Shown in pieces: positions 15,820 through 35,428 of a stretch of 64,000 nucleotides of DNA; position 1 is the stretch's first letter; each line of letters begins with the position of its first letter. The stretch lies in IMG/VR virus record IMGVR_UViG_3300036770_004723, positions 1 through 64,000 of that record, one strand, 5' to 3'. The notes beneath the pieces are model-generated. The model made no database searches and was not told where the DNA came from. It saw nothing but the letters and a program-made list of their open reading frames with translations. The translations under genes and the position numbers were made by a program.

Positions 15820-17283
15820 ATGGTACGCGCAACTTCTTTAAATTCAGCAGTAGGTTTCAATCAACATGTTGCAGCCATTTTACAAGACTTCCAAAAACAA
15901 TATGCTTGGTTAGATAAAGAAAAAAGTAGTATAGGAGTATTTTTAGTCGATGCACTGGCAGGCATAAGTGAAGTAGGACAAACACATTTAATGTTTGCTA
16001 TGCGCGAAGCTTTTTTACAGAAAGCTCGCAGAGAAAGCAGTATATTGGCCGGTGTGAAATTTTTAGGTATAGAAATAAGTAGAAAAAGCGGATCTGCTGT
16101 AGTAGCTCAATTAAGAAATAATTCAGATAATGCGGTAACAATAAATGCGTTTTCTCAATTTAGTGTAGGTCAAAAACCATTTTATAATCCTAACGGTGCA
16201 ATACTTCAGCCTAGATCAATTTTAAATTTATTTCTTAAACAAGGTGAAGTAAAAATAAAAACTGTAGATTTGTCTTCATTGGATTTGGTTTTCCCTGTTA
16301 TTAATCTAGATGTGCCTGAACACATAGTATCAAATGAAGATATTCAGATAAATACAATTAGCAATAACATTAGAACTCAATGGTATAAACATTCTGATTC
16401 ACTGTATGAATTAAATTCAAGTGACAGAAAATACATGGAAACCACAACAGAAAAAGGTGACGTAAGCTTTTTGTTTGGTAACGGAGAGTTCGGTACTAAA
16501 TTGCCGGATAAAGGAATTTTAGAAATACGTTACATAATTACACAAGGATCTAACGGCAATATAGGAAGTCCAGGTGCAGTAGTAAACTACAATGTAAATA
16601 ACTCAATTAACGGTGTTACTGTAGAAGGCGCTGTCGGCGGATCTGATCAGAAAAATGCAGATTTCTATAAATTTTATGGCAGCAGGTTATTTGAAAGCCG
16701 AGGCAATTTAATAAAACCTTCTGACTGGGAGGCGCTGGCAGAGTATCCAGATATTGCAGATATAGTTCCACAAGGACAAAAAGATTTAGCTCCAGATGAT
16801 CCAAGCTACATGAACGTAGTAAGATTATGTGTGTTACCTATTAATAGTAGTAATTGGGGAGGAGCCAATCCAAACCCAACAAGTGGTCAGTGGACTAGAT
16901 TTTTAAAATATGTAAAAGAAAGATCTGGAAGACATTTAACAATTATCCCACATAATCCAGAAAAGATCTTAGTCGATATTTCTATTGAAGTCTACGTTTA
17001 TGAAGATCAAAATACAGAAATGTTAAAAACCGAAATACTTGAAGACATAAATAAGTTTTTTGCCCGTAGAACCGGTATATTAGGTCGTGCTTTAATACCT
17101 AGCAGCGATCTTGATCGTGTAGCACGTAGAACCTTAGATAATAAAATACGTGAAGGTGTTGACTACATTAAAATATTAAGTCCGACTGTAGATATAATTC
17201 CGGCTTCGAAAATCGAATACGTTAGTCCAAGATCAATTCAAGTACTTGTTAAGTACACTGATCGTAAACGCGAGACTTTCTAA
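15820..17283 (+). CDS. Baseplate wedge subunit (T4 gp6/baseplate J-like)
   Basis: Follows gp25-like gene; FLQKARRESSI, FLFGNGEFGTKLP, YIITQGSNGN, GGSDQKN motifs. Confidence 0.8.
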   Translation: MVRATSLNSAVGFNQHVAAILQDFQKQYAWLDKEKSSIGVFLVDALAGISEVGQTHLMFAMREAFLQKARRESSILAGVKFLGIEISRKSGSAVVAQLRNNSDNAVTINAFSQFSVGQKPFYNPNGAILQPRSILNLFLKQGEVKIKTVDLSSLDLVFPVINLDVPEHIVSNEDIQINTISNNIRTQWYKHSDSLYELNSSDRKYMETTTEKGDVSFLFGNGEFGTKLPDKGILEIRYIITQGSNGNIGSPGAVVNYNVNNSINGVTVEGAVGGSDQKNADFYKFYGSRLFESRGNLIKPSDWEALAEYPDIADIVPQGQKDLAPDDPSYMNVVRLCVLPINSSNWGGANPNPTSGQWTRFLKYVKERSGRHLTIIPHNPEKILVDISIEVYVYEDQNTEMLKTEILEDINKFFARRTGILGRALIPSSDLDRVARRTLDNKIREGVDYIKILSPTVDIIPASKIEYVSPRSIQVLVKYTDRKRETF

Positions 17284-20200
17284 TGAAAAATTTAACTAAC
17301 TTACTTATTGAAATGTTAAGAGCAGATCCTTTAATATCTTCTGCTCACGATGTAATAGATGAATACTTCAAACAAAATGTTACTCAATATATCGATCAGT
17401 TTGAACAATTACGTGCCATCAATGAAAATACACCTAATCAAATTGTAGACGATAGCATTAGATTAATAGGTATGAATATACCTAATTGGGTAATGGAAGC
17501 GAACGGTAATAATATACGTCAATGTTTTTACCACCTAACTCAATTCTATCAGGTTTCCGGTGTAAATGCTTACCCAAAATTTATTGAATTTCTATTGGGT
17601 AGAGGTTTTAAAGTAAGTAATCTTTATACAAGCGATTATGTTTCTTTTTACACAGAACCGAAAGGAAAATTAGTCCACGAAGGCGGCACATGGTTTAGTA
17701 CAAGTCATGTAGATCTTGAAGTTTACGCTAACAATATTTTAAATGCGTACCCTTTAACCTTGAATGATCAAGATGTAGTTTGGATCAAAAAAAGTCTAGA
17801 TTATGAAAAACAACCTCAGTGGAAAAAAGACGATATTGATAACGATATAAATTTAATGATTAAAAACGGAACAGTGTACGGTATCAATGATGCTGTTTAT
17901 GCTTACACTGTACTAGATAAAAGAATCATTGATTTGTTTTATCAATTTGCACCTATTGAAGAAGTAGTGCGCGGTATTTACATGACTATTGCTTCAGCAG
18001 CAAATTTAATTATATCAATGAGTGTTGTTGAAGAAGGAATTGATTTTGTAGATCTTAGCTCAGCCAATCCGTTAACTGTGATTTTAGAGCTTAATAGTAT
18101 GTTAAGCGCAGGTAAAGAGTATAAATACTATGCCAGAGTTATTTGGGACAATGAAAGTGAAACCATTGAACCTATTAAAATAACTTGGGCGGATCATGGT
18201 TATACTCTAATAGATAAAGATACAATTATTTTTGCAGAAGTAGAAAATCTTATACGTAAAAATGTAGTTTTACAATATACTTGTGTTGGAAGATCCTTAT
18301 CCAGTACAATTACTGTGTATCAGGGAGGCGTCGAATTAGTACCTGCTGAAGTATTAATAAGCGGCTCTAATATTCTTAGAGAAAATTCAGTAACTCAATT
18401 TAAGGTTTTAGGTAATTTTCGTGGTCCTCAAGGTGACACTAAGATACGTGAAATATTCGATGTAGAAAATGTCAAATTTTATTCTGAAAGTGAACACGTT
18501 TCGGTAAACGGTTTTCAAGTAAAAGTAAACAGAATCTTTGAAGATAAAAATATTAAATTGTTTGCTGAATACACAACCAGCGAAAATGTTATAATAGCAA
18601 CAGAATACGATGTTGTACTAAAACAAAATCTTAAACCAGTATTACCTATTAATATAATACAAAGATTTTTCAAATTGGTAATAGATGTAAATGGTGAGGT
18701 ATTAGGTGAATCTGAAGAATTTGGAGACTTGGTTCAAGGAACAACTTACAGATTTCTTACACAAGTACTTTATTCTAACAATCAAGTTGTTGATGTTAGA
18801 TGTGACAATTTATTATCCAGTCCTGTTATTACTATTGATTCCTCTGATAAATTTTTAGTCACCGCAACTGGATCTAACTACTCTAATGTATTCACGTCCA
18901 AGTACGTAGAAAATGATGAAACCTTAATTGTTGAAACTAAAAAACTGTGCATGTTTCCTCAAATAGAATTGTTGAATTTGGAAATCCAAGGCCCAAGTTT
19001 TATAAAAGAAGGAGAAGTGCAAAACTACACAGTTATAGCCGAGTGGAGTAGTGGTCAATACAGCAGTGTACCTGCGGCTACCTTAACAAGTAAAGAAAGT
19101 TTATTAGGTAATCAATTACTGTACGCTTTGGATATCAACAACTTCGGCCAAGTAACTGCGCCTGTAATAGGTAGAACGCGGCCTGCTTTGTTAACAGCAA
19201 AAACACAACGTTACACTGACGGTCAATGGATAAGCACACAAAGAATTATTGAAATTAAAAATACAGAAAGAGAACCAGTTACTTTAGATATTATAATGTC
19301 TGAAGTTATTAATGAAGGAAATATACTTCCCTTATATTTCTACGCGAATTGGTCTGACGGAAAACGAACTCAGGTATTACCAAACAAAGTTGTTTTAAAA
19401 ACAGACAGTAGAGTATTATGCTCTATGATCCGTGAAAATGAAAACAGTCCTGATCTATTTCAAGAATTTAAGTATGGTGGATTATCTATTGAAAACGATC
19501 CTAATTTGGTTTTCACTGATTTTGAAAATGGTGTAGAATGCAAACAATTAAATCTTGAATACTCTAGACCTAGTTCAATAAAAGGATTAGTAACTATTTC
19601 TTTCGAGTATACAGATCCTGCCTCTAGTGTTACACTTACTTATGATCGTATTTTCACAGCCATAGCCTATATTGTAACACCTACAGATATAGAGCTAGAT
19701 TCACCTGTTGTAATGGGTGAAGGTACACGATATTTTGTCCGTGCTTTAGTGACGTATGAAGACAGTTCAGTAAAAGAAGTGGATGCGATTTGGAAAATAA
19801 CGGATACTGTAGGTGACACTGAAGATCTAGATGCGGATATAAGCCAAGGCTTCTTTACACTAGATCAAATAGTCCAAAGCTTAATCGGTGAGTCAAAAGA
19901 AAATATAACAGATTTAGCTTTAAGTGGGCAAAATTTAGATCAATTCCAAATAAGAAGTCTTGTCCAAGGCGAGCCTTTATTCAGATCGCTACAAAACCAA
20001 CCTATACTAGGTCAAACTTGGCCGCAAAAACTTGCGATTTTATATGCCCAATATAGTGAAGCACTTCCTAGATGTGTGGTGCAAACACGTTTTGGAGATC
20101 AAGACGCTAAATTTGTTTTAAATTGTTCGTTCTACGCACTTCAAGACCAAAAAGTAATAGATGTAATAGATAAAGAAGTAGAGCCTTCTAATAAAATTTT

Positions 20201-21926
20201 AAATTGGTATATAACTGGTGATGTTGAAATAGTAGCGAATTTATACAATTTTTATTCTTACGGTCTTGTAGTAAAATACGATGACACCGGCGTAGAATAT
20301 TTAGTAAGTAATGATTGGAGTATTGAACTATATGCTGATGATACTTTTGATCAGCGACGTGAATTAATCAGAACTATAGTAATGCGTGACGGTGATAGCA
20401 TATTGCCTATGGATAATGATGGTAGCGGAACACGTAAAACTGTCGATGAATTAACAACTGAAGAAATGTTGAATATAATGCCTACTAGCAGCGTAGTTGA
20501 CATAGATCAAAATGGTTATCTGTATCCAAGAATAAATGAAAATATTAGAGCAGTCATTACAGCTGATTATGATGATGGTGAACAAGTATTTAGTGAGTCA
20601 CTAAGTATCTACATGAGAAAACAAAATACTAGATTGAAAAAGATTGAAATAGCCTTAATAGGTCCAACAGGAAATTTAACTTATGATTTTAAAACTAAGT
20701 TAAAAGACGAACCTAATGAATGGTCTTTTGTTTCACCTGAAAACGTAGTTTACTATCAATTCAAGGCTTTTTTAACACGTATGGATAGTATAGATCCTGT
20801 AGAGCTATCTAAAAACTTATTTTGGAAAGCTGAACCCATAGGTACAGGTGTTAGTTTTGATGAATTGACTGGCCGACTTTATGTACAAAGACAATTTGAT
20901 GATAGTGATATAACTATAGTGGCTAAATATGAAGAAGAGTTCCGTGAAAGCGAAACAAGTTCAACTGTATTTCTAGAGGAGATTGTAGCAAGATCTATTT
21001 TAAAAATTTTTGCACATAAAGCCTTGGATGCAATTGATGTAGTGGGTTCTTTGCATACAAATAGCGGTACAACTTATTACCCAAAAGTAGATGTTGTTAG
21101 ACGTGATGGATCATTGGCACAAAATGTTTTGCAATTTGCTCTTGTTTCTGGTCCTAACGATGTAAGTTTGACAGCTGATCTGTTAGGTTTTGTTATACCA
21201 AAAAGAACAACAGATGCAACAATGATCATTCGTGCTTTAGCGACAGAAGGATCGAGAGTTATAAAGAGAGATCTTGAGATAAATATACTAGCTTCTTTTG
21301 TTCCTATGGATTTAGTCATAAACAGTAATCCTAGCGGCCTTAGAGATAATAGTAAATATTTTCTAAAAGCTTTTTTAGAAATGCGTGATAATACTGTATA
21401 TGATGCAACTCAAGAATGTTACTGGTTATTGGATACAAACTTTAATGGTTTAAATTTAGGAAATCGCAATGGCATACTCGAAGTTCCTTATGTTGAGAAA
21501 GATACTGAGATAGTAATTCGTTGTATATATACACGTAATGAAAAATCTTTTGAGAAAAAACACGTTATTACCATACAATCAAGTTATCCAATATTTTTCA
21601 GTGAGGTTGCTCAACCTATAGATGATCAATTTTTGCAGACAATATTGGCAGGTAGTAAATTTCTTAGGTTGTTGAGTGATGTAGGTGGAAAATTTACTTG
21701 CGCACCTAATGCCAATGAGTACTGCTATTTTGCTTGTAAAAAATCTAATGGAATTGCCAATATAGCTATAGTACCTAGTTCAAGTAATCAAGTTAATTGG
21801 GGAGGTATGTTAATGCCTGTTGAAGTAACTAGAACTTATTTGGACGGTACTGCTGAAATTTGGAATATTTACAGAAACACAGTTAGAGGCTTTGGTGTTG
21901 CAGAATTTAGTGTAGCATATACTTAA
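17283..21926 (+). CDS. Large baseplate protein with tandem Ig-like repeats
   Basis: 1547 aa; gp7-like position; recurring I.G...V.EG....Y.V.A.(W/Y).DG-type units. Confidence 0.65.
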   Translation: MKNLTNLLIEMLRADPLISSAHDVIDEYFKQNVTQYIDQFEQLRAINENTPNQIVDDSIRLIGMNIPNWVMEANGNNIRQCFYHLTQFYQVSGVNAYPKFIEFLLGRGFKVSNLYTSDYVSFYTEPKGKLVHEGGTWFSTSHVDLEVYANNILNAYPLTLNDQDVVWIKKSLDYEKQPQWKKDDIDNDINLMIKNGTVYGINDAVYAYTVLDKRIIDLFYQFAPIEEVVRGIYMTIASAANLIISMSVVEEGIDFVDLSSANPLTVILELNSMLSAGKEYKYYARVIWDNESETIEPIKITWADHGYTLIDKDTIIFAEVENLIRKNVVLQYTCVGRSLSSTITVYQGGVELVPAEVLISGSNILRENSVTQFKVLGNFRGPQGDTKIREIFDVENVKFYSESEHVSVNGFQVKVNRIFEDKNIKLFAEYTTSENVIIATEYDVVLKQNLKPVLPINIIQRFFKLVIDVNGEVLGESEEFGDLVQGTTYRFLTQVLYSNNQVVDVRCDNLLSSPVITIDSSDKFLVTATGSNYSNVFTSKYVENDETLIVETKKLCMFPQIELLNLEIQGPSFIKEGEVQNYTVIAEWSSGQYSSVPAATLTSKESLLGNQLLYALDINNFGQVTAPVIGRTRPALLTAKTQRYTDGQWISTQRIIEIKNTEREPVTLDIIMSEVINEGNILPLYFYANWSDGKRTQVLPNKVVLKTDSRVLCSMIRENENSPDLFQEFKYGGLSIENDPNLVFTDFENGVECKQLNLEYSRPSSIKGLVTISFEYTDPASSVTLTYDRIFTAIAYIVTPTDIELDSPVVMGEGTRYFVRALVTYEDSSVKEVDAIWKITDTVGDTEDLDADISQGFFTLDQIVQSLIGESKENITDLALSGQNLDQFQIRSLVQGEPLFRSLQNQPILGQTWPQKLAILYAQYSEALPRCVVQTRFGDQDAKFVLNCSFYALQDQKVIDVIDKEVEPSNKILNWYITGDVEIVANLYNFYSYGLVVKYDDTGVEYLVSNDWSIELYADDTFDQRRELIRTIVMRDGDSILPMDNDGSGTRKTVDELTTEEMLNIMPTSSVVDIDQNGYLYPRINENIRAVITADYDDGEQVFSESLSIYMRKQNTRLKKIEIALIGPTGNLTYDFKTKLKDEPNEWSFVSPENVVYYQFKAFLTRMDSIDPVELSKNLFWKAEPIGTGVSFDELTGRLYVQRQFDDSDITIVAKYEEEFRESETSSTVFLEEIVARSILKIFAHKALDAIDVVGSLHTNSGTTYYPKVDVVRRDGSLAQNVLQFALVSGPNDVSLTADLLGFVIPKRTTDATMIIRALATEGSRVIKRDLEINILASFVPMDLVINSNPSGLRDNSKYFLKAFLEMRDNTVYDATQECYWLLDTNFNGLNLGNRNGILEVPYVEKDTEIVIRCIYTRNEKSFEKKHVITIQSSYPIFFSEVAQPIDDQFLQTILAGSKFLRLLSDVGGKFTCAPNANEYCYFACKKSNGIANIAIVPSSSNQVNWGGMLMPVEVTRTYLDGTAEIWNIYRNTVRGFGVAEFSVAYT

Positions 21927-24377: not shown

Positions 24378-25883
24378 ATGAATTTTTCCACACGATTGGA
24401 ATTAATATCTAATCAAACAGATCCTGATCAAAGTCTAGGTAAACTAGACAGTTTAGGATCTGTTAAATTTGACACAGAACAAGCTGCAAATCCTTTAAAT
24501 ATATCTTTTGCTTATGATAAAAAAGCAGGAATACTTTCTTTAGTTTTATCTCCAGACAACATAATACAGGCTACAGGTTTTATCACGGAAAGTATGGTAG
24601 GTACGGGATTACGAGGCGGGAAAGGTAAAAGGGGACGTGATGGAAAAAATGGAAGATTAGGTTATGATGGAAAAACTGGGAAAACGGGATGTGTAGGGTT
24701 ACCAGGTAAAAAAGGTAAAAAAGGTCTAAGTGGAAAAGATGGCGAAGATGGACCTATTGGGCCAATAGGTTATGCAGGTCCAATAGGCGAAGATGGCGAA
24801 GATGGCGAAGATGGCGATAAAGGTATTATAGGACATGAAGGTTCAAGAGGTCTAACAGGTTCTAGCTGTTGGCAAGGTGAAGAAGGAATTCAAGGACCTA
24901 AACCTTTTGAATTTGTACATTTTTCACCTACTCCACCAAATGACTTAACTGTTTATCTTTGGGCACAGCCTGTAGAAATTTCTGTAGATCCGACAACACC
25001 TGCTATACCGCAAACTCCAATGTCAGGATCTATAGAAAGTAAAAGTATGAATGTGCCGACTGTAGGATCTGGTTGGTATCAAGGAACATTATACTTTAAT
25101 CTAAGTAGTTTTCAAGGAGGCACTGGACCATTTATATATAAATGGTCAGGTGACTACTCAGGAAAGTTAGAATTAGTTGTTGTAGACACAGGCGAAGCCA
25201 GTCAAAACCTAAATTTAAGATGTAGACTTTATTTAAATGAGACTACTGTTAAAAGATTGGAAGGCAAAGTGTATCTTGAAATAACAGATTCATCTAACGG
25301 ACAAAAGTTAAACTTAGAGGCCAATTACTCTTTTATCGTACAAGCTACTTTAATTGTTGGTGGGGGCGGTGGTGGAGGCGGTGGTGGTTGTATACTATAC
25401 GGCCAAAAAGTTTTAACAGTCACCAAGAAAAATGTTTTAATAGAAAATGTTTTATTAGGTGACAGTTTATTAGGGTGTGATATTAAAGGCGTTCCAGATT
25501 CTTCTGGAGGCAGCATGAAATATTTTGAGTGGTCTACAACAAATCTTATTGAACATGAAACGGATGTGTATGTAAGAAAAGCTGATCACTCAACACATAA
25601 TGTTTACTATGAAATAAACGGTGATCTGTGTTTAACAGGCGAAGAAGCACTTTTAGTGTGCCGTAATGAACATTGGCGCTTTTTGCGGGTAGTTAATATA
25701 AAAATAGGTGATCTGCTCAAGCATATAGATGGAACAAAAAAGATTACTGAAATAAAGAAAATCGAAAAAGATGTTAAAGTAGTCAGTTTAGATGTTGAAA
25801 GCATTGATATGTTTTATGTGAACGGTTACGTTATACATAATAAAGAAGCTTTAGATGCAGAATACAAACAAATAGAATATTAA
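24378..25883 (+). CDS. Collagen-like fibre protein with C-terminal Gly10-Hint domain
   Basis: Long Gly-X-Y run, beta domain, Gly10, then C-ILYG...YVNGYVIHN. Confidence 0.85.
   Translation: MNFSTRLELISNQTDPDQSLGKLDSLGSVKFDTEQAANPLNISFAYDKKAGILSLVLSPDNIIQATGFITESMVGTGLRGGKGKRGRDGKNGRLGYDGKTGKTGCVGLPGKKGKKGLSGKDGEDGPIGPIGYAGPIGEDGEDGEDGDKGIIGHEGSRGLTGSSCWQGEEGIQGPKPFEFVHFSPTPPNDLTVYLWAQPVEISVDPTTPAIPQTPMSGSIESKSMNVPTVGSGWYQGTLYFNLSSFQGGTGPFIYKWSGDYSGKLELVVVDTGEASQNLNLRCRLYLNETTVKRLEGKVYLEITDSSNGQKLNLEANYSFIVQATLIVGGGGGGGGGGCILYGQKVLTVTKKNVLIENVLLGDSLLGCDIKGVPDSSGGSMKYFEWSTTNLIEHETDVYVRKADHSTHNVYYEINGDLCLTGEEALLVCRNEHWRFLRVVNIKIGDLLKHIDGTKKITEIKKIEKDVKVVSLDVESIDMFYVNGYVIHNKEALDAEYKQIEY
25389..25841 (+). 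other. Hint (intein-like) domain, 151 aa, non-canonical
   Basis: Cys1 (aa 338), block B TGEE (His replaced), terminal HN followed by Lys. Confidence 0.8.
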
Positions 25884-26543: not shown

Positions 26544-26552
26544 GGTAATTTT

Positions 26553-27584: not shown

Positions 27585-30500
27585 ATGGCAAGGCTACGTT
27601 TTAGATCGCCTTATAATAACAAATGGTTAGATGCTTGCAATCATCAAATATTTATCAGGTCCCCTGATAATAGAACTTGGTATCAATTAGATCCAAAACG
27701 TGCTAGTGTCCGTGATGGTGGAAATTTAAATTGGTTAGAACTTGATTGTAATCCTGATCCACTTTTTGATGAACCTTGTGCATTTAAAGATATAGCAAGC
27801 GTTAACTGTCCTAGTGGTACTCCTACAATTGAGTTAGGTTCAGGTGACGGTACTGGAAGTAATGGTCCTCAATTCAATTTAGTAAATGGTTATCCGGCAG
27901 GTTACGACTTGCCGGATGCTGGTTCTTCAGGATTTTTCTTAGATACTTTAATATCAAGTGCAAAAGGTTTAGCTATCAAAAGACCTGCTTTAAATTTTGC
28001 ACTAGAGTCCTATGATCCGTCAGGTACAACAAGTAATTTAGGTCGTGGTACATACGATAACCCTAATTATTTGTGGGCAACTACATTTAGTAGTGGCTGT
28101 GCTATTACCGAAACAATTTACGATCTTGGATTAGTAGCTGGTTGGTATGAAATTCCATTTGCTTGTTATCACCCTGAAGGTATTAGCGTAGACGTTTATT
28201 ATTTAGGTAGACGCATTGCAACAACATGTGGACGCATTAAAGATCGTTACAAGATTGAATTCTTTTTTGATCCAAGTGCAGGATCTGGTGAAAGTCGGAT
28301 AATGATCAGAGTACGTGGTGAAGAATCAACACGTTGGTCATTAATGGTTATAGGGCCAAAACAAAATTTAAGTGTATACAATTTAGATTGGACAGATTTA
28401 ACTCAAGCGCTTGCCATACGCCAAGATGAATATAATGGTACTCCTATATTTCCAGCACCTTGTCACGCCACAGTATTTCCAAGAACATATAAAACTAATG
28501 ATGGAAAATGGTTTTATGAATTTCATCACTATGTAGGTGAGAACGCAGATCCTACTGAAATCGCTAGAATGGTTTTAGACTATAGTAGTTGGATGAATCA
28601 TGATAAATTTGAAATATATCATGGAGGTCTAAGAATTGGAAGTACAATGGATCCAACTACTTTATTAGGTATGATTGAATTTTTGTGGGAACCTAATCGT
28701 TTTGTTATACCTGTACCAGATTTAATGATAAGGGTTAGTGCAGAAAATAGAGAATACGGCCAAGATATAATGAGCTGGTATTATACATTATTCTGTCAAA
28801 ATACTGCTGGATATAGAGCGAATCCTTGGCCTTGTGAAACGCCTATTGCAGGTTTAAGTAGCATGGGACATAGTAGCACCGAAGATAACTATAACATGGA
28901 TAACGGAGTACAAAAAGGTGTTGTTAGTGTAAAAGTTATTCCTTACGGAGACTTCAACTACTCTGTTAGTATATTCGATATAGATCAGAATTTAATTTCT
29001 TATACTGAAGCATCTAAAACAGCATTTATTCAGTTTTTTATTTTTAAAGATCAACATGGGAATTCTAGAAATAGAATAACAGTAAGGATCGATGCACCGC
29101 TAGGATCAAGCTGGACTTACTTTGTAGGTTGTCCTGTTGAATTAATTGATATTGAAATAGATGATAAAGTTGTTCCTGTGTGCGATGGAGATGTTGAGAT
29201 ATCAATTCAAAATTTAAGTATTCAAAAAAATACAACAGGCAAATTTACATTGAATACTAATATTCCTGTCCCATCTGATCTAACTATTAACGTAGCTACT
29301 TCTGACGGTACAGCGTTGAGTGCATTAGGTGCAGCAAACTACGGAGGATTACCTAATATCTACGGTATTTTCAATGATGTAGACTCTATATCTGATGGTG
29401 CTACGGTAGCAACTAAATCTGGTAGATTTTTAATACAGAATTTTCCAACTGCTTCAGTTATTTTTGATAACGGTTGGGGAAATTTAGCAAATCCAGAGTA
29501 CAAAGGTAAGACACTTGGTAGCAACACTAGATTTGCTGAAAATATTCTAACATCTACATTTGCAAATTTAAGTCCAGATGCAAGAGTTTTAATAAACTCT
29601 TGGAAGCATCGCTTAGGTGATTTAAGTGGTAAACGTTGGTTAATATTAACCGACACCTCAGACAGCTTAAGTGATTTTTCAGTAATATGTTCAAACTTTA
29701 TTCAGAGCATGATAAACATTTATGGATTAACTGTACAAGTAGTCAAAGACGATTACAGTAACTTACCTGCTCTGTATGATATCCTAACAATTGCAAATAG
29801 CAAAAAATGGGCAGATGTAGGCAAATATAGTTCAGGAGGCGTACATTATATTAATAGAGTTCTACAAGGATATAAGAGTCCTGTAGCTATAGGCATAGCC
29901 ACACAAATAAAACAAAATAAAGTTTTTCACGCCTATTTTAAAAATAGCGCAAATCGTTTATCTGAAAATATTTTTATACGTGACGTAATGAATTGTTTTA
30001 CCGGCGTTAAGTTGCAATGGAATGAACAAGTATCTAAATCACTGTCGGTTCCAAGTGTAAGTTTAAATGTACACACTCAACAATTTCCTGATACACCACT
30101 AACAAATGGTATAACTGAACAAAAATTAGATACTGATTTTTCAGTTATTGATATGCGTTATGATACTGTTGTAAATTTAGATCCTGATTATGAAGCTAGA
30201 TCAGGAACTGTTGTTATTCCAGCAGGTCAAAGTTCAGGAACATTTGATGTACGTACTTTAGATCCAGCAGCCAATCCAGTCGGTAAATTCTTTTTCCTAG
30301 ATCTTTTGACATCTTCTTATGGTGATATAGTTGAAGAACAAGGTAAAGCAACAATAATTAATTCTACAGCACCTAATCCTGTAACAGACGTACACTTCAC
30401 AAAAACATCTTATGCTGCAATGACATGGACAAGCGACGCAGGATGCAGTGTGGTATTTGGTGTAGATTCTGCTAATCTAGATCTTGGTGACATGATTGGT

Positions 30501-30896
30501 TCATTGGCTGCTGGAGAATTTGATTCAAATCCTTCAGGTAATTTTAATAACGCCCGTTATTATAAAGTAGGCAGTTATAAAAATGATTCTACTCTCACTT
30601 ATGAGTGCAAATGGGAATACGTGGTTAAGGTAAAGGATTACGCAGCTAATTTAGTTTTTTTACCTACATCAATCACCAGTTTTCAACCTATTTCCTCGAA
30701 TAAACGTTTTATAGTTTCTATGAATGTGCCAGCAGGTACAGAAGTAGATCAAACGGCAATAGTGGAAGCAAACTTAATTATTAAAGATAGTTTAGGTAGA
30801 ATATCGAAAAGTAATACAGTGACAATTGTTTTAACTTACGTAGTTCCTGGTTGGGGAGGTGGCGGTGATACTGGACCTAGCGGAATTGTTTTCTAG
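27585..30896 (+). CDS. Large multidomain virion/fibre protein with split Calx-beta domain
   Basis: Likely ATG at 27585 (AGGA RBS); repeated beta modules; Calx-beta halves ATSDGTA and DYEARSGTVVIPAGQSSGTF; ends GWGGGGDTGPSGIVF. Confidence 0.75.
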   Translation: MARLRFRSPYNNKWLDACNHQIFIRSPDNRTWYQLDPKRASVRDGGNLNWLELDCNPDPLFDEPCAFKDIASVNCPSGTPTIELGSGDGTGSNGPQFNLVNGYPAGYDLPDAGSSGFFLDTLISSAKGLAIKRPALNFALESYDPSGTTSNLGRGTYDNPNYLWATTFSSGCAITETIYDLGLVAGWYEIPFACYHPEGISVDVYYLGRRIATTCGRIKDRYKIEFFFDPSAGSGESRIMIRVRGEESTRWSLMVIGPKQNLSVYNLDWTDLTQALAIRQDEYNGTPIFPAPCHATVFPRTYKTNDGKWFYEFHHYVGENADPTEIARMVLDYSSWMNHDKFEIYHGGLRIGSTMDPTTLLGMIEFLWEPNRFVIPVPDLMIRVSAENREYGQDIMSWYYTLFCQNTAGYRANPWPCETPIAGLSSMGHSSTEDNYNMDNGVQKGVVSVKVIPYGDFNYSVSIFDIDQNLISYTEASKTAFIQFFIFKDQHGNSRNRITVRIDAPLGSSWTYFVGCPVELIDIEIDDKVVPVCDGDVEISIQNLSIQKNTTGKFTLNTNIPVPSDLTINVATSDGTALSALGAANYGGLPNIYGIFNDVDSISDGATVATKSGRFLIQNFPTASVIFDNGWGNLANPEYKGKTLGSNTRFAENILTSTFANLSPDARVLINSWKHRLGDLSGKRWLILTDTSDSLSDFSVICSNFIQSMINIYGLTVQVVKDDYSNLPALYDILTIANSKKWADVGKYSSGGVHYINRVLQGYKSPVAIGIATQIKQNKVFHAYFKNSANRLSENIFIRDVMNCFTGVKLQWNEQVSKSLSVPSVSLNVHTQQFPDTPLTNGITEQKLDTDFSVIDMRYDTVVNLDPDYEARSGTVVIPAGQSSGTFDVRTLDPAANPVGKFFFLDLLTSSYGDIVEEQGKATIINSTAPNPVTDVHFTKTSYAAMTWTSDAGCSVVFGVDSANLDLGDMIGSLAAGEFDSNPSGNFNNARYYKVGSYKNDSTLTYECKWEYVVKVKDYAANLVFLPTSITSFQPISSNKRFIVSMNVPAGTEVDQTAIVEANLIIKDSLGRISKSNTVTIVLTYVVPGWGGGGDTGPSGIVF

Positions 30897-31377
30897 GTCA
30901 GGACATACAGTTCAATCTTTATTAATTGAATCATCTAATCTAAATAACCCTCCGATTATAATCGGAGGGTTTGCTAGACATCTACATGATCTAAAAGGTT
31001 TTAATGATATTGATTGGCTTTGCTATGACCAGACTAGTTTTGTGCAAATGTGCAATTTAATGAATAAACATTTTGAGTTAATAGCTATTTCCATATGCAA
31101 AGACTACTTTTATTATAAAGAAGTTGTTGGCGCGAACAAAATAATTCATCAGGTTCATACTTTACCTAATGTTGGTTGTCACCATGATTTTTTAAACTAT
31201 GCTGATTTTACTGTTAGCTGCATAGGCTTTAATTATACGACTATAATTAAACATCGTTTATTTGATTATGATCTTAAACAAAGTATTTTAAGAAAAAACG
31301 AAAGTTATGTTAAACCTTTTGATAGATCTAGGATCAAGAAATATACGGATCGTGGATTTAAAATGAATTTAATTTAG
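30865..31377 (+). CDS. Nucleotidyltransferase-fold protein (PolyA/CCA head-like)
   Basis: IIGGFARH...FNDIDW, DFTVSCIGF and RIKKYTDRGF motifs; GTG at 30865 with GGAGG 5 nt upstream. Confidence 0.7.
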   Translation: MILDLAELFSRSGHTVQSLLIESSNLNNPPIIIGGFARHLHDLKGFNDIDWLCYDQTSFVQMCNLMNKHFELIAISICKDYFYYKEVVGANKIIHQVHTLPNVGCHHDFLNYADFTVSCIGFNYTTIIKHRLFDYDLKQSILRKNESYVKPFDRSRIKKYTDRGFKMNLI

Positions 31378-31387: not shown

Positions 31388-34300
31388 ATGGCTGGAACAC
31401 CTTTTGTATCAGTTTATGAAAATTTAAATGCAGATCCAGCAGACACAGTTGCGAATTATACTTGGAAATACGATCACGAGTATATTGTTTATGTAGTAGA
31501 AAGACATAAACGTACTGAATTAGGTATGAGTTATACACTAACACTAAGATCTGCTATAGGTTCATCTGATAGAGGATTTATCGCCAAACACATCGACTGC
31601 TATGTTATATTTGATCAGCAGGATATGAAAATAAAAACACAGACTAGACAAGGTGATTGGTGTCCGATAGTAAAAATACTAGAAAGACCTGTAACATTTG
31701 GTGTAACTGATCATACTTCTGAGAATTGGGAAGAGTGGTGGACAGGTACGGCAGCTCAAGTATCAAAACCTTGGGAAGATGACTACGAATATTTTGTACT
31801 TTCAAGTCAAGGTGCTGCCCCTGGAAATATAGGTTGGTCAAGTTTTGTTACTTCTTTACATTTTTTTATACCTGAAGAATTTGAACAAGTCCCTATAAAT
31901 GGTGAGTGCTTTATGCGCCCCACTGTGGATGGAGGTATTAAGTTTTGGCGTCCACATTGGGGTGGAAATAAAAGTAGTAGATACGTAGCTACTTGGGGCA
32001 ACGTATCTATTATTTCACATATATATAGAAGAAAAATTCGTTTTGATACAGCACCATCAAAACAATTTAATAGTTGGTTTAAAAAGCAAATATTCGGTTT
32101 TCCTTATGGCGTATATGCAGGTAATAAATGGCGCGATGCGAAGCCATGTAATTGGGTAGAAGATAAAGAAGTTATTATGATGACCTTGGACTGTTCTGGT
32201 CCTGACGAATTAGCTTCCTCTTATTTTTTTACCGATAGTGCTATGTTTACTTTGCCTAGTAGTGTAATGAATTATAGTGAAGGGGGCATGGTATGCGAGT
32301 CGGGAGTTAGTCATTTTACCATGTTAAATACTCCCAATTTTGCAAGACACGGTGTTAAAACTGTGCATACCTACGGAGATGATGGTGCAACTGTTTTTGT
32401 AATGTATGAAAAACTGGATGTTTTAGCTGACGATCCTGTTATTATTGTTCCTCCTGAACCAGATCCTAAGCCGCCGTCATGTTCAGACTGTGTAAGGGCA
32501 GGATCTATTTGGGAACAAACTGCAAATATTGAAGTAAAATTTTTAAAGCCTGTTGATTGGCAATTACGTAATTACCGTTACGTGTGGTCCGGTGATATAG
32601 GTAATGGAAATGTTGAGTTACTTGGAACCGAAGACAAAGGGCGTATTGCCAAAATTCGTTTTGCAAAACAAATGGCAGTTGAAGACTCTTCAACCTTTTT
32701 ACCTGTTAATATTGTAGTAGAAGTATTTGACGAAGATTATAGTGCAATAGGTATATCTGATAAAGATAGCGCAGTAATATCTTTTGAATTGCCTTGTGTA
32801 ATATTAGCGAACGAACCTAATATATCTATACAGGATTTAAGTATTATAGAAGGTGATGTCGATAATAAAATACTGTTAAAAATTTCTGCCAGTGAGCCAG
32901 CTGAAGGTGGAGATATAACAGTTGATTGGACTACAGTTGAAGACACTGCAACGAATAATGTAGATTATTACCAAGCTAGCGGGACCGCTACTATAGTCGA
33001 AGGATCAAGTGAAGCTATTGTGGAAATAATGTTGATAGGTGATGATATTTTAGAAAGCAATGAAACTTTTATTGTACGTATTTCAAATGCAAGTCGTGGA
33101 AATATTGTTAAAGATACAGGTATCATAACTATACTAGATGATGATGCAAGTCCTTGCGGTGTAGATACGCCAGCAGGCGGTGCAGGTGTAACAGAAACAA
33201 CACATTTCTTAGGCTCTAATCCTGGACGTGTTATAGTTACATTTGAAATGTACGGTGTACAAGATAAAATGGAAATTTTTTATGAAGGAAATTTAGTTGC
33301 GGCCACAAGCCCAGGTCCTGATGGTAAAAATGTACCAGGAGGTAATATTTTAAATCCTGGATTCGTTAGCGATCAAGGTAATCTTTCTTTTGACTATTTT
33401 GGTCCACCTAGAGCAACTTCATTTATGATCAGAATGACAGGTCCTGATGGAACTGAATGGAATTATAAATTTAATTGCCCTGTTCCTTTCGATGGTGGAT
33501 GGGATGGAAAATTAGATGCAGTTCCTACATTAATATTCGATCCTTTAGGTAATGGTACTGAGTTTGACGCAGGTTTGTTTATTATGCCTGATGGATCTAT
33601 CCAAGCAACTTCTGCTTCAGGACCTTTAGGTTATTGGAGTGGGGCAATTGCAAATAGCTCTAATTCCGAAGTAAAATTTGAAGTTATTTCTGGTACGGCA
33701 AGTGTACATAATAATGCTCCGGATTTTTCACCTTTAGCATCTTCCAGACAAATATGGTTACGTCTTCCATTAAATTCTCCTGTTACTGAAGTAACTATTA
33801 GAGTTTATTTGCGTGAAGCCGGTTCTACAACAGCAATAGTAACTAAAGACGTGGTGTTAAAAGTAGGATCTGGAGGAACTGGAGGTGGAGGCAATGGCTG
33901 TTTTATTTACGGCACATTGATCGACATGGCTGACGGTACTAAAAAGAAAATTGAAGATATTGTTGTAGGTGATAAATTAAAAACTTTATTAATACCTGAT
34001 ATGCCGGACGCAAGTGCAGAAGATCCTACCAGCTATTTCGATTGGTCTGAAATAGCTATCGCACCTACTTATGCGGAATGTTATGTAAAAGATGTGGATC
34101 ATAATAGCTTTAGTTATTATTACAAAATATTTGCAGAAAATATGTTTGAACCTTTATGTATAACAGTAGAACATCCGGTATTAGTTAAATTTCAAGAACA
34201 AGGTATGGAATGGCATTGGGATACACCAGCTAGATTAAGAATAGGTGATTATCTTTATAATAATAAGATGGAAGCAGTTAAAATTTTGACGATAGAAATA

Positions 34301-34420
34301 GTGGTTGAAAAAATAAATACCGCTAATTTAAACGTAGAAAATTTAGATACATATTTTGCTAACGGTATATTTGTACATAATAGTGAAAATACAGAAACAC
34401 CTAAAGAACCTATAGGGTAA
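31388..34420 (+). CDS. Multidomain virion/fibre protein with Calx-beta and C-terminal Hint domain
   Basis: ISIQDLSIIEGD...VDWTTVEDTATNNVDYYQASGTATI...ILDDD (Calx-beta); GGTGGGGNG-CFIYGT...VHN-S. Confidence 0.85.
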   Translation: MAGTPFVSVYENLNADPADTVANYTWKYDHEYIVYVVERHKRTELGMSYTLTLRSAIGSSDRGFIAKHIDCYVIFDQQDMKIKTQTRQGDWCPIVKILERPVTFGVTDHTSENWEEWWTGTAAQVSKPWEDDYEYFVLSSQGAAPGNIGWSSFVTSLHFFIPEEFEQVPINGECFMRPTVDGGIKFWRPHWGGNKSSRYVATWGNVSIISHIYRRKIRFDTAPSKQFNSWFKKQIFGFPYGVYAGNKWRDAKPCNWVEDKEVIMMTLDCSGPDELASSYFFTDSAMFTLPSSVMNYSEGGMVCESGVSHFTMLNTPNFARHGVKTVHTYGDDGATVFVMYEKLDVLADDPVIIVPPEPDPKPPSCSDCVRAGSIWEQTANIEVKFLKPVDWQLRNYRYVWSGDIGNGNVELLGTEDKGRIAKIRFAKQMAVEDSSTFLPVNIVVEVFDEDYSAIGISDKDSAVISFELPCVILANEPNISIQDLSIIEGDVDNKILLKISASEPAEGGDITVDWTTVEDTATNNVDYYQASGTATIVEGSSEAIVEIMLIGDDILESNETFIVRISNASRGNIVKDTGIITILDDDASPCGVDTPAGGAGVTETTHFLGSNPGRVIVTFEMYGVQDKMEIFYEGNLVAATSPGPDGKNVPGGNILNPGFVSDQGNLSFDYFGPPRATSFMIRMTGPDGTEWNYKFNCPVPFDGGWDGKLDAVPTLIFDPLGNGTEFDAGLFIMPDGSIQATSASGPLGYWSGAIANSSNSEVKFEVISGTASVHNNAPDFSPLASSRQIWLRLPLNSPVTEVTIRVYLREAGSTTAIVTKDVVLKVGSGGTGGGGNGCFIYGTLIDMADGTKKKIEDIVVGDKLKTLLIPDMPDASAEDPTSYFDWSEIAIAPTYAECYVKDVDHNSFSYYYKIFAENMFEPLCITVEHPVLVKFQEQGMEWHWDTPARLRIGDYLYNNKMEAVKILTIEIVVEKINTANLNVENLDTYFANGIFVHNSENTETPKEPIG
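33899..34381 (+). other. Hint (intein-like) domain, 161 aa, canonical splicing residues
   Basis: Cys1 (aa 838), block B TVEH, terminal His-Asn, +1 Ser; no homing endonuclease. Confidence 0.85.
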
Positions 34421-34433: not shown

Positions 34434-34649
34434 ATGCCTAGAACTGTTAGATTAAGGGTCAGAGATATTAAAAATGTTTCTGATCCTTTTCACATTAAAA
34501 ACTTCCATAAAGGAGGTTGGAAAGTAAGAACTTCAAAAGGATGGGTACGTATGGTTCCGGCCAATACGAAAATAGTAAATCCCGATTTTGATTCTTCGAA
34601 ACCTGATAGCAATGAAAACCCAAAGTTTACAAATATAATTGGTGAGTAA
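34434..34649 (+). CDS. Small virion protein resembling the N-terminus of 27585
   Basis: 71 aa, AGGAG RBS; RLRVRD.KN...W..R...W pattern. Confidence 0.65.
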   Translation: MPRTVRLRVRDIKNVSDPFHIKNFHKGGWKVRTSKGWVRMVPANTKIVNPDFDSSKPDSNENPKFTNIIGE

Positions 34650-34651: not shown

Positions 34652-35428
34652 ATGAATCTTACACAAATACCAATGGCTTTGGTAAAGCCTCAAACAGGCG
34701 CTATAGCAGGCCAAACAGTTAGTGTCGTAAGTCCAGAAAAATTAGGTACTGAGGATCCGCAATCAGGGTTAGTTCCTGCTGTAATACAAGGAACTTATGA
34801 TAGTGAAAGCGGAACAGTAACATTAGTAAATGCTGACGATAGTATTGTTACCATAACTGGATTTCCAACTGAGAGATCATTACCGCAAGGCCACAGAGGA
34901 CCTGAAGGTAAAGTTGGCTTACGTGGTTTACCTGGTAGGTCAGGACGAGATGGTAAACCAGGAATACAAGGTTGTCCAGGAGTTAAAGGAGATCGTGGAT
35001 TACGTGGGCCGATAGGGCCAGAAGGGCCAAGAGGCCCACAAGGAGAAATAGGTAAAACAGGTGAGAAAGGTGATAAGGGAGATAAAGGTGACGCAGGTGC
35101 TGACGGCGTAGAACCTGAATATTTAAAAACTAGTCGTGGTGTTTCTATCACAATAAAAAGAAGTGGCGGAAATATACAAAGCGGCTATTATGAAAATATT
35201 TTACAGGATAGAACAATTACTGTGCTTTTCCCGCGTAACCTTGTTAACCAAGTAGCATCAATAATTCTTTTCTTTAAAAATCCTAGCAGCTACCAAGCAC
35301 AAAATTACGAAATAGGGAACTATTTTTATGATGACCTTGAAATTGGTGGCTTTACAATAACTTTAAAAGGTACTGTACCTACACCGCTAGAAGCTTGGCA
35401 ATTCTGGTGGCTGGTAATGGGCGATTAA
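34652..35428 (+). CDS. Collagen-like fibre protein with beta C-terminal domain
   Basis: LTQIPMALV / YD...G.VTL...ITGFPT N-domain, Gly-X-Y run, IQSG...ITVLFP fibre-tip-like domain. Confidence 0.8.
   Translation: MNLTQIPMALVKPQTGAIAGQTVSVVSPEKLGTEDPQSGLVPAVIQGTYDSESGTVTLVNADDSIVTITGFPTERSLPQGHRGPEGKVGLRGLPGRSGRDGKPGIQGCPGVKGDRGLRGPIGPEGPRGPQGEIGKTGEKGDKGDKGDAGADGVEPEYLKTSRGVSITIKRSGGNIQSGYYENILQDRTITVLFPRNLVNQVASIILFFKNPSSYQAQNYEIGNYFYDDLEIGGFTITLKGTVPTPLEAWQFWWLVMGD

What the first reader, a model, noticed from the sequence alone, without database searches (positions are those of the whole stretch)
33870..34420. Splicing-competent mini-intein-like domain at the extreme C-terminus of a virion protein
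Seen: GGTGGGGNG, then Cys1, block B TVEH, block F/G ...YFANGIFVHN, +1 Ser, and only 12 aa (SENTETPKEPIG). There is no homing endonuclease, and the site is a flexible Gly linker rather than a conserved enzyme core, unlike selfish inteins. Two paralogous Hints with different chemistry (HN-S vs HN-K) sit on fibres 8 kb apart. Inference: a phage-encoded autoprocessing or protein-ligation system for tail-fibre maturation.
Basis: partly seen in the sequence, partly recalled or inferred. Interest (0 to 1): 0.8.

Follow-up and report, generated by a model that had tools for sequence, protein, structure and literature searches.

The report
Self-cutting Hint cassette with lysine tail
The last 173 residues of a jumbo-phage tail-module protein are a real intein-like (BIL-type Hint) self-processing domain, of a kind common on phage surface proteins. 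Comparison with relatives points to a conserved single lysine in the short tail, not the +1 serine, as the likely partner of the catalytic cysteine.

Summary
ORF 31388..34420 (1010 aa) ends with a Gly-rich linker, Cys838, block B T926-V-E-H929, F-V-H997-N998, Ser999 and a 12-aa tail. There is no endonuclease. A second Hint (31% identical) closes the collagen-like ORF 24378..25883.

An alignment-based AlphaFold model (pLDDT 91.8) is a HINT fold. Its best PDB matches are bacterial-intein-like (BIL) domains, ahead of inteins and Hedgehog.

The module is not a selfish intein. It belongs to a large, mostly phage family (1908 cluster representatives). In that family it sits after a Gly linker at the extreme C-terminus of unrelated adhesin-like virion proteins.

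Canonical splicing through Ser999 is not supported. Position +1 is S/N/N/T/A/A in positional orthologues and S/T in only 12 of 94 family members.

New here: 93 of 94 tails contain lysine and 87 contain exactly one (56 ± 3 expected), although tail sequence and lysine position drift freely. The closest solved relative, Tetrahymena BUBL BIL2, joins its N-flank's C-terminus to a lysine by an isopeptide bond.

Best reading: self-excision of the Hint. The Gly837~Cys838 thioester would be resolved by tail Lys1006 (inferred) or by water. Nothing has been tested experimentally.

The parts
31388..34420 (+). 1010-aa tail-module protein carrying the C-terminal Hint cassette
   Evidence: ORF listed. It lies in a + strand block with a baseplate wedge gene (15820..17283), a tail protein (17283..21926) and collagen-like fibre genes. 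It is syntenic with L031, L033 and the Erwinia phage Y3 / phage NCTB tail modules.
32876..33145 (+). Calx-beta domain (residues 497-586)
   Evidence: Pfam PF03160, E 2.4e-10, 40.9 bits against a cut-off of 27.
33866..33898 (+). Gly-rich linker GSGGTGGGGNG ending in Gly837 (position -1)
   Evidence: Sequence. In the family, position -1 is Gly in 68/94. The ten upstream residues are 46% Gly and 0.5% Lys. AF2 pLDDT here is about 55.
33899..34381 (+). BIL-type Hint domain, Cys838 to Asn998 (161 aa, no endonuclease)
   Evidence: AF2 with a 94-row alignment gives pLDDT 91.8 and pTM 0.86. Foldseek PDB top hits are BIL2 of the T. thermophila BUBL1 locus (E 2.8e-11) and the C. thermocellum BIL domain 2lwy (E 2.5e-9), then inteins and Hedgehog. 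The best PDB hit by sequence is the same BIL2.
33899..33901 (+). Cys838, Hint residue 1 (predicted thioester former)
   Evidence: Cys in 93/94 aligned family members.
34163..34174 (+). Block B T926-V-E-H929
   Evidence: Thr in 88/94 and His in 89/94.
34376..34381 (+). His997-Asn998, block G end (predicted succinimide-forming Asn)
   Evidence: His in 93/94 and Asn in 94/94. Every member has at least one residue after the Asn.
34382..34417 (+). 12-aa tail SENTETPKEPIG; Ser999 at +1; the single lysine K1006 is at 34403-34405
   Evidence: Position +1 is not conserved. Lys is present in 93/94 tails and exactly once in 87/94, against 56 ± 3.2 expected. Lys at +8 is invariant in the four closest orthologues while +1 varies. 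AF2 pLDDT is about 68.
24378..25883 (+). Paralogous carrier: a 501-aa collagen-like fibre protein. Its Hint runs 25389-25841 (C338 to N488), block B is T420-G-E-E423 (25635-25646), and the tail KEALDAEYKQIEY is at 25842-25880.
   Evidence: Translation. Collagen repeats E 1.3e-14. Full-length match to PHROG 38766, E 5.4e-61. Family HMM E 1.9e-48. The His-to-Glu change in block B is shared with L031, P0034 and P0072 but not with Y3_110 or Afa-NA1.

Best explanation
Residues 838-1010 are a bacterial-intein-like (BIL, A-type-like) Hint autoprocessing cassette. It is a host-function module that tailed phages fuse, through a Gly-rich linker, to the extreme C-terminus of many unrelated adhesin-like virion proteins.

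Proposed mechanism:
1. Cys838, helped by block B Thr926/His929, converts the Gly837-Cys838 peptide bond into a thioester. This is inferred from conserved residues and from the established chemistry of the HINT superfamily.
2. The thioester is resolved. The +1 side chain is unlikely to do this, because it is not conserved. The most likely nucleophile is the epsilon-amine of the single tail lysine (K1006), giving a Gly837-(epsilon)Lys isopeptide. The closest solved relative, BUBL BIL2, is reported to join its upstream flank to a downstream lysine in this way. Hydrolysis is the fallback.
3. Asn998, with His997, cyclises and cuts the Hint from the tail.

Net result: the 161-aa Hint is removed. The mature virion protein ends at the Gly linker, either free or capped by the 12-aa peptide through a branch. 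The module would thus be a single-use, ATP-independent maturation device, a functional counterpart of the self-cleaving C-terminal chaperone domains (Peptidase S74) of other phage fibres.

Confidence by layer: the fold, the family and 'not a selfish intein' are shown (about 0.95). Catalytic competence is strongly implied by conservation (about 0.75). The lysine step (about 0.4-0.5) and the biological purpose are inference. The overall figure given is for the statement as a whole.
For: Fold and family:
- The AF2 model has pLDDT 91.8.
- BIL domains are the best PDB matches by structure and by sequence.

Catalytic conservation in an alignment with only 24% mean column identity: C1 93/94, block B Thr 88/94, block B His 89/94, penultimate His 93/94, terminal Asn 94/94.

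Module behaviour:
- 92 of the 114 hit proteins that contain a full-length Hint have it within 40 residues of the C-terminus, after a Gly-rich linker, on unrelated N-terminal parts.
- The partner domains are Calx-beta, collagen, LCCL, Laminin_G_3, fn3 and DUF642.
- The nearest clusters are Uroviricota.

Non-canonical +1:
- A22 K14 V13 S8 L8 F6 I5 N4 R4 T4 D2 Q2 Y1 M1 across the 94.
- S/N/N/T/A/A in positional orthologues.

Lysine tail:
- 93/94 tails have Lys and 87/94 have exactly one. A permutation of tail residues expects 56 ± 3.2, with a maximum of 70 in 20,000 trials.
- Phage-ORF C-termini of the same lengths give a mean of 47 with Lys and 29 with exactly one.
- The K/R ratio is 4.7 in tails against 1.9 in the Hint body, and there is no Cys in 930 tail residues.
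- On the tree of Hint bodies the Lys offset changes at least 54 times, while Lys presence changes once.
- Lys is at +1 in 37 of 66 internal or tandem Hints.
- A second sample mostly agrees.

Precedent and analogy:
- BIL2 forms a K(epsilon-NH2)-to-C-terminus isopeptide without ATP (PMC8616854).
- BIL domains mostly cleave at their N- and C-ends (PMC7664689; PMC7765530).
- In L034 a Hint-ended 1622-aa protein sits next to a 2028-aa protein carrying Peptidase_S74.
Against: - There is no experimental datum for any member. No paper on C-terminal Hints of phage virion proteins was found.
- The lysine could serve another purpose, since its offset from Asn varies from +1 to +30.
- A few remote subgroups lack it: a Cys-rich-tail group P0207-P0210, plus P0213, P0220 and P0096.
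- A capped C-terminus has no obvious use.
- Model coordinates could not be inspected, so the Lys-to-thioester distance is untested.
- The 94 sequences are the best hits to one query and are related, so the counts are not fully independent.
- Every Pfam Hint model scores below its gathering threshold on this protein.
- The paralogue's clade has Glu in place of the block B His, so at least that copy may work differently or slowly.
Confidence: 0.5

Rival explanations
1. Canonical class-1 intein splicing. Ser999 attacks the thioester, a branched ester forms, Asn998 cyclises, and the 12-aa C-extein is joined to Gly837 by a normal peptide bond.
For: All class-1 positions are present in this particular sequence: Cys1, TxxH, HN and +1 Ser. 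NCBIfam intein_Cterm just passes its cut-off, 16.7 against 15.6 bits.
Against: - Position +1 is Asn, Asn, Thr, Ala and Ala in the positional orthologues.
- S/T occurs in only 12/94 family members, scattered as at least 12 separate changes on the tree.
- The tail sequence is unconserved even where the last 30 Hint residues are about 90% identical.
- The domain is not inserted in a conserved host site.
- BIL domains rank above inteins in the structure search.
Confidence: 0.1
2. Plain self-cleavage. The thioester is hydrolysed (Hedgehog-like, without an adduct) and Asn cyclisation drops the tail. The tail lysine has a non-nucleophilic role, such as positioning or stability.
For: BIL domains are reported to give predominantly N- and C-cleaved products (PMC7664689; PMC7765530). 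The G|CF junction resembles the Hedgehog cleavage site, and Hedgehog Hint is a good structural match (E 5e-6, TMt 0.80).
Against: - It does not explain why exactly one Lys, and not Arg, is kept in 87/94 otherwise free-drifting tails at variable offsets.
- It does not explain why Asn plus at least one following residue is invariant at the very end of a protein.
Confidence: 0.25
3. Intermolecular ligation platform. The Gly837 thioester is passed to a lysine or other nucleophile of another virion protein, covalently anchoring the protein, or to a host-surface molecule. This would resemble BUBL BIL2 dispensing ubl4 to other substrates, or Hedgehog transfer to cholesterol.
For: BIL2 is reported to conjugate its N-flank to different substrates (PMC8616854). 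The linker ends in Gly like a ubiquitin tail and lacks Lys. The proteins that form the 'hairs' of this phage group are unknown (PMC6143709). A conserved Lys-rich 71-aa ORF follows the gene in three related phages.
Against: A built-in tail lysine would compete with any external acceptor. No acceptor has been identified. The 71-aa ORF is absent after the NCTB homologue. There is no direct evidence.
Confidence: 0.1
4. Catalytically silent domain retained in the virion as a structural or receptor-binding tip.
For: Degenerate copies exist. NCTB has a standalone Hint lacking Cys1 and the block B His. The paralogue clade lacks the block B His.
Against: Near-invariance of all catalytic positions across a family with 24% mean column identity is hard to explain without catalysis. 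The surface of the domain is otherwise unconserved.
Confidence: 0.05

Closest known systems
BIL2 domain of the Tetrahymena thermophila BUBL1 polyubiquitin-like locus (PDB 6Y75, 6TMM)
   Same: It is the best PDB match by both sequence (E 7.5e-4) and structure (E 2.8e-11, TMt 0.79). It has Cys1, a block B His and a terminal Asn. Its upstream flank ends in Gly. It is reported to join that C-terminus to a lysine of the downstream flank by an isopeptide bond, without ATP (PMC8616854).
   Different: It is eukaryotic (ciliate) and sits between two ubiquitin-like domains. The phage module sits at the very end of virion proteins, and its downstream flank is only a 1-39-aa peptide carrying one lysine. 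Identity is only about 22%. Nothing here has been tested biochemically.
A-type bacterial intein-like (BIL) domains (Amitai et al. 2003; Dassa et al. 2004; C. thermocellum BIL, PDB 2LWY)
   Same: HINT fold with blocks A, B, F and G. Conserved C-terminal His-Asn. The +1 residue need not be a nucleophile. They are located in variable regions of non-conserved, surface or secreted proteins, and they carry no endonuclease (PMC7765530). 2LWY is the second-best structural match (E 2.5e-9, TMt 0.83).
   Different: The described BILs are bacterial and usually internal, with sizeable downstream regions. This family is mostly phage, terminal, preceded by poly-Gly and followed by a single-lysine tail. I found no description of that tail feature in the papers searched.
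Canonical class-1 mini-inteins (e.g. Mtu RecA, Ssp DnaB, gp41-1)
   Same: Same fold and the same catalytic positions. The window's copy even has +1 Ser.
   Different: Inteins sit in conserved sites of essential proteins, need a +1 Cys/Ser/Thr and restore a functional host protein. Here +1 is free to vary, the 'C-extein' is a non-conserved peptide, and the insertion point is a linker.
Hedgehog/Hog C-terminal autoprocessing domain
   Same: It is C-terminal, uses a G|CF junction and cleaves off the functional N-terminal part through a thioester. It is a good structural match (1at0, E 5e-6).
   Different: Hog domains lack the terminal His-Asn and carry a sterol-recognition region. Here HN is invariant and only 12 residues follow it.
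Pre-toxin HINT (PT-HINT, PF07591) of polymorphic toxins
   Same: It is the Pfam label most often found on nearby clusters, and it scores sub-threshold on this protein. It is also an autoproteolytic release module on filamentous proteins (PMC3482391).
   Different: PT-HINT sits just before a C-terminal toxin domain that it releases. Here there is no cargo after the Hint.
Intramolecular chaperone / Peptidase S74 C-terminal domain of phage tail spikes and fibres
   Same: Functional analogy only: a C-terminal, self-removing module on phage fibre proteins. In L034 a Hint-ended protein and an S74-ended protein are neighbours.
   Different: The fold and chemistry are unrelated (by general knowledge, a Ser-Lys dyad in a trimeric chaperone). 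There is no sequence similarity.

Membership tests
HINT superfamily | Hedgehog/intein fold | tested here: met
   AF2 model pLDDT 91.8, pTM 0.86. 61 PDB matches at E<=1e-3; all 50 listed are BIL, intein or Hedgehog domains.
HINT superfamily | N-terminal Cys/Ser nucleophile and block B Thr-x-x-His | tested here: met
   C838 and T926-V-E-H929. The family shows C 93/94, T 88/94 and H 89/94. The paralogue has T-G-E-E instead.
A-type BIL domain | Conserved C-terminal His-Asn with a +1 residue that need not be Cys/Ser/Thr | tested here: met
   H 93/94 and N 94/94. Position +1 is S/T in 12/94 and never Cys.
A-type BIL domain | Located in variable regions of non-conserved surface or secreted proteins, with no homing endonuclease | tested here: met
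   The domain is found on unrelated N-terminal parts after Gly linkers. It is 161 aa with no endonuclease hit.
A-type BIL domain | Match to the published A-type BIL sequence motifs or profile (Amitai et al. 2003) | not testable with these tools
   That profile is not in any library here. As a proxy, solved BIL domains are the top hits by sequence and structure.
A-type BIL domain | Autocatalytic N- and/or C-terminal cleavage | not testable with these tools
   This needs protein expression. Only residue conservation supports it.
Class-1 intein | +1 Cys/Ser/Thr nucleophile maintained by selection | tested here: not met
   Ser is present in the window. The positional orthologues have S, N, N, T, A, A, and the +1 residue changes at least 57 times on the tree.
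Class-1 intein | Insertion in a conserved site of a host protein whose function needs ligated exteins, with intein-free alleles existing | tested here: not met
   The insertion point is a poly-Gly linker. The downstream 'extein' is 1-39 aa and unconserved.
Hedgehog/Hog domain | C-terminal sterol/adduct-recognition region, and no terminal His-Asn | tested here: not met
   Only 12 residues follow the Hint, and HN is invariant.
Pre-toxin HINT (PF07591) | Scores above the Pfam gathering threshold and is followed by a toxin domain | tested here: not met
   17.4 bits against a cut-off of 27.7. There is no downstream domain.
BUBL-type lysine-ligating BIL | Downstream-flank lysine acting as the nucleophile (isopeptide product) | tested here: inconclusive
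   A single conserved tail Lys is present in 93/94, with K not R. The chemistry itself is untested.

The most novel reading that the evidence does not exclude
Tailed phages widely use a terminal BIL-type Hint plus a one-lysine tail as an ATP-independent, single-turnover isopeptide-forming device on their surface proteins. It would work by 'lysine splicing': the tail's epsilon-amine, not a +1 Cys/Ser/Thr, resolves the Gly~Cys thioester. In some contexts it might pass the activated Gly end to a lysine of another virion or host molecule, covalently anchoring fibres or 'hairs'.
Probability: 0.35. Interest if true: 0.8.

Novelty: new variant of a known kind. Interest (0 to 1): 0.62.

Why it matters
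If the module works as proposed, three things follow.

1. It would be a second natural case, and the first viral or prokaryotic one, of Hint-catalysed lysine isopeptide formation. That would extend a curiosity known from one ciliate locus to thousands of phage proteins.

2. It would define a new route of virion-protein maturation, parallel to the S74 chaperone-protease domains. This matters when annotating receptor-binding proteins: the mature C-terminus would be the Gly linker, not the encoded end.

3. A compact 161-aa domain that needs only an upstream Gly and a downstream lysine would be an attractive protein-ligation tool.

If it merely cleaves itself, it is still a widespread and uncharacterised processing step in jumbo 'hairy' myoviruses, whose hair proteins are unknown.

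Tried and rejected
- Single-sequence AlphaFold gave an unusable model (pLDDT 34). It was replaced by the alignment-based run.
- Megablast of the gene against GenBank phages found nothing. The phage is new at the DNA level.
The second sample therefore came from a profile protein search limited to proteins of 100-320 aa.
- The word-based homologue search on the Hint region gave only 5 hits.
- Literature searches found no study of C-terminal Hints on phage virion proteins and no virion proteomics usable here. The search terms covered BIL with phage and tail; Y3 with intein; Hint domain with tail fiber; intein-like with autoproteolytic; and BIL2 with isopeptide and lysine. The Y3 paper itself is not in the library.
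- A pre-toxin reading was rejected, as there is no cargo after the Hint.
- In-frame read-through into the next ORF was rejected. The ORF at 34434 is in another frame, has its own Shine-Dalgarno sequence, and no Hint-like sequence lies elsewhere in the window.
- General C-terminal lysine bias as the cause of the tail lysine was rejected by the control.
- Read laying and the look-up of sequencing runs were not used, because nucleic-acid reads cannot show protein processing.
Full report
**1. What is in the sequence**

The window is the first 64 kb of a 286,584-bp IMG/VR contig, IMGVR_UViG_3300036770_004723. Its G+C content is about 35%.

From about 15 kb to 57 kb the + strand carries a tail and baseplate block:
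- a baseplate wedge gene (15820..17283);
- a 1547-aa tail protein;
- a 788-aa protein;
- a 501-aa collagen-like protein (24378..25883);
- two small collagen-like fibre genes;
- a 1108-aa protein;
- the 1010-aa ORF 31388..34420;
- a further collagen-like gene and other virion proteins.

The gene order 1547/788/501/216/163 aa mirrors Y3_112 to Y3_108 of Erwinia phage vB_EamM_Y3. It resembles the order in phage NCTB and Alcaligenes phage Afa-NA1. This places the phage in the 'Lupandier' or 'hairy Myoviridae' jumbo group (PMC7412058; PMC6143709). There is no DNA-level match in GenBank phages.

**2. Checking the observation**

The 1010-aa ORF ends with these features:

| Feature | Window coordinates |
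|---|---|
| Linker GSGGTGGGGNG | 33866-33898 |
| Cys838 | 33899-33901 |
| Block B TVEH (T926 to H929) | 34163-34174 |
| His997-Asn998, in ...YFANGIFVHN | 34376-34381 |
| Tail SENTETPKEPIG (Ser999 to Gly1010) | 34382-34417 |
| Stop | 34418-34420 |

- The Hint is 161 aa, with no endonuclease.
- The paralogue is real. The 501-aa protein has collagen repeats, a G10 linker, Cys338, block B T-G-E-E, and ...VIHN followed by KEALDAEYKQIEY.
- A family HMM finds only these two copies in all six frames of the window.
- The two copies are 31% identical.

**3. Is it a Hint, and of which kind?**

- Pfam's Hint models all score below threshold.
- phmmer against 1.84 billion cluster representatives gives 1908 hits at E<=1e-3 and 275 at E<=1e-10.
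- PHROG 38766 ('virion structural protein') covers the paralogue end to end (E 5.4e-61) and the main copy's Hint (E 1.4e-9).
- With a 94-row alignment (A1) AlphaFold gives pLDDT 91.8 and pTM 0.86. The linker and tail are less confident.
- Foldseek against the PDB ranks BIL2 of the T. thermophila BUBL1 locus first (E 2.8e-11) and the C. thermocellum BIL domain 2LWY second (E 2.5e-9). These come ahead of the Prp8, DnaB, gp41-1 and RecA inteins and Hedgehog.
- The same BIL2 is the best PDB hit by sequence alone.
- In BFVD the top hits are the three NCTB proteins, then 'Hint domain containing' proteins of uncultured Caudovirales fused to fn3, PASTA or collagen.
- The nearest ESM-Atlas clusters are Uroviricota.

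**4. Family anatomy**

Among the best 150 hits, 114 proteins contain 125 full-length Hints. In 92 of these proteins the Hint lies within 40 residues of the C-terminus. The rest are internal or in tandem arrays.

In A1 (mean column identity 24%) the following positions stand out:

| Position | Count in A1 |
|---|---|
| Cys1 | 93/94 |
| Block B Thr | 88/94 |
| Block B His | 89/94 |
| Penultimate His | 93/94 |
| Terminal Asn | 94/94 |
| Gly at position -1 | 68/94 |

- The ten residues upstream are 46% Gly and 0.5% Lys.
- Every member keeps at least one residue after the Asn. Tails run from 1 to 39 aa, with a median of 8.
- The N-terminal partners are unrelated to one another: Calx-beta, collagen, LCCL, Laminin_G_3, fn3 and DUF642.

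This is the behaviour of a shuffled functional module, not of a homing intein.

**5. The +1 serine**

- Across A1 the +1 residue is A22 K14 V13 S8 L8 F6 I5 N4 R4 T4 D2 Q2 Y1 M1.
- The closest orthologues (56-59% identical over the aligned C-terminal region) come from syntenic contigs. They have N, N and T at +1, and a different tail (NDGSPINK[DN]), although the last 30 Hint residues are about 90% identical.
- More distant positional orthologues have Ala at +1: L033, with tail AENQKN, and NCTB, with tail APVDQKH.
- On a tree of the Hint bodies the +1 residue changes at least 57 times, and the S/T state at least 12 times.

Canonical class-1 splicing through Ser999 is therefore not a conserved property. 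The serine in this copy looks incidental.

**6. The tail lysine (new)**

- Of the 94 tails, 93 contain lysine and 87 contain exactly one.
- Redistributing the pooled tail residues gives 56.1 ± 3.2 tails with lysine, with a maximum of 70 in 20,000 trials. No other residue deviates in this way.
- C-termini of the window's own ORFs, cut to the same lengths, give a mean of 47 with lysine (maximum 61) and 29 with exactly one (maximum 43).
- Arginine does not substitute. The K/R ratio is 4.7 in tails against 1.9 in the Hint body. Tails contain no Cys at all.
- The offset of the lysine from Asn ranges from +1 to +30, most often +5, +6 or +1. It changes at least 54 times on the tree, whereas lysine presence changes once.
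- In the window the lysine is K1006 (+8). It is invariant in the four closest orthologues while +1 varies.
- The paralogue has K at +1 and +9.
- Additional phage examples all carry lysine: Y3_110, Afa-NA1, two NCTB proteins, L005 and L031.
- Among 66 internal or tandem Hints, +1 is Lys in 37, and a Lys lies within +8 in 52.
- A second sample from a profile search mostly agrees. The exceptions are a small Cys-rich-tail group (P0207-P0210) and the singletons P0213 and P0220.

**7. Mechanism**

The conserved Cys1, TxxH and HN positions imply the standard Hint reactions: an N-to-S acyl shift at Gly837-Cys838, and succinimide formation at Asn998. This follows from established HINT chemistry and is summarised in PMC8616854 and PMC7765530.

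BIL domains are described as mainly N- and C-cleaving (PMC7664689). BIL2, the nearest solved relative, is reported to form an isopeptide between its upstream flank's C-terminus and a lysine of the downstream flank, without ATP.

A solitary, K-specific lysine that floats in position within an otherwise unconstrained tail is what one would expect of a flexible intramolecular nucleophile. I therefore propose that K1006 resolves the thioester, and that Asn998 then releases the Hint. The protein would end at Gly837, capped by the 12-aa peptide through a branch. Hydrolysis is the alternative.

This step is inference. I could not inspect model coordinates, and no biochemical data exist.

The likely purpose is removal of a C-terminal maturation module. 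This would be analogous to the Peptidase_S74 chaperone domains of other fibres. In L034 a Hint-ended protein and an S74-ended protein are adjacent.

**8. The paralogue**

The paralogue's block B reads T-G-E-E. The His-to-Glu change is shared by its closest relatives (L031, P0034, P0072). The Y3 and Afa-NA1 orthologues keep T-x-E-H. This, rather than 'HN-S versus HN-K', is the chemical difference between the two copies. Whether it slows or alters the acyl shift is unknown.

**9. Comparison with known systems, and novelty**

The module meets every testable criterion of an A-type BIL domain. It fails those of class-1 inteins (selected +1 nucleophile, conserved insertion site), of Hog domains (adduct-recognition region, no HN) and of pre-toxin HINT (downstream toxin).

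Annotators have already noted an 'intein domain' in homologous tail proteins of NCTB, Y3 and Afa-NA1. UniProt also lists 'Hint domain containing' phage proteins. The presence of the domain is therefore not new.

I found no functional study in the library. I also found no description of two features: the terminal architecture (poly-Gly, Hint, one-lysine tail) and the lysine signature itself. I rate it a new variant of a known kind, with moderate-to-high interest that depends on the lysine chemistry being confirmed.

Noticed in passing
window 25635-25646 (paralogue block B): The collagen-like paralogue and its closest relatives (L031 1-1179, P0034, P0072) have T-x-E-E instead of T-x-E-H in block B. 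Cys1, HN and the tail lysine are kept. The Y3 and Afa-NA1 orthologues retain the His.
   Followed up: partly
window 34434-34649: A 71-aa basic, Lys-rich ORF with its own Shine-Dalgarno sequence immediately follows the Hint gene. It is conserved (59-69% identity) at the same position in L031 and L033, but is absent after the NCTB homologue. Function unknown; it has a weak match to PHROG 29040.
   Followed up: partly
window 27570-30896 and 30859-31377: The upstream 1108-aa protein ends in a Gly-rich stretch (GWGGGGDTGPSGIVF) with no Hint. NCTB's 1304-aa Hint-bearing protein shows only a weak local similarity (E 0.029) to a domain of the window's 1010-aa protein that PHROG 26008 also detects in the 1108-aa protein, so any link between the two is tentative. 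A 172-aa ORF of unknown function overlaps the end of the 1108-aa gene in another frame, as also happens in L031. This may reflect loss or replacement of a Hint.
   Followed up: partly
L001 744-1205 (phage NCTB BN7874_135): A standalone 153-aa degenerate Hint with no Cys1 and no block B His. It still ends in HN followed by KVD. It lies directly after a Hint-ended tail protein.
   Followed up: partly
P0003, P0005, P0150 (L035 5335-9192): Proteins made of tandem Hint domains joined head to tail by junctions of the form HN-K-x(0-4)-C. A single lysine sits between successive catalytic Asn and Cys residues.
   Followed up: no
L007-L029 (marine viral contigs): A separate group with an internal Hint between proline-rich linkers (PPPIM|CFVAGT ... 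HN|KMPP). Position +1 is always Lys.
   Followed up: no
P0207-P0210: Small (~172 aa) proteins that are little more than a Hint starting at residue 5. Their tails are Cys-rich (GSPCxACxxCG...) and lack lysine, making them an exception to the lysine rule.
   Followed up: no
P0153: A 1478-aa alpha-2-macroglobulin-like protein of a Candidatus Magasanikbacteria MAG carries a related Hint at its C-terminus.
   Followed up: no
L034 1925-12869: A 2028-aa protein with Peptidase_S74 and a 1622-aa Hint-ended protein are adjacent. Two different self-processing C-terminal modules thus occur in one fibre locus.
   Followed up: no
window 25893-27044 and 34652-35428: Three further short collagen-repeat proteins (216, 163 and 258 aa) without Hints lie in the same module. 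They are candidates for the 'hairs' of this phage group.
   Followed up: no
window ~15000: Strand switch and GC-skew sign change between a leftward block of small genes (365-15036, - strand) and the rightward structural block.
   Followed up: no
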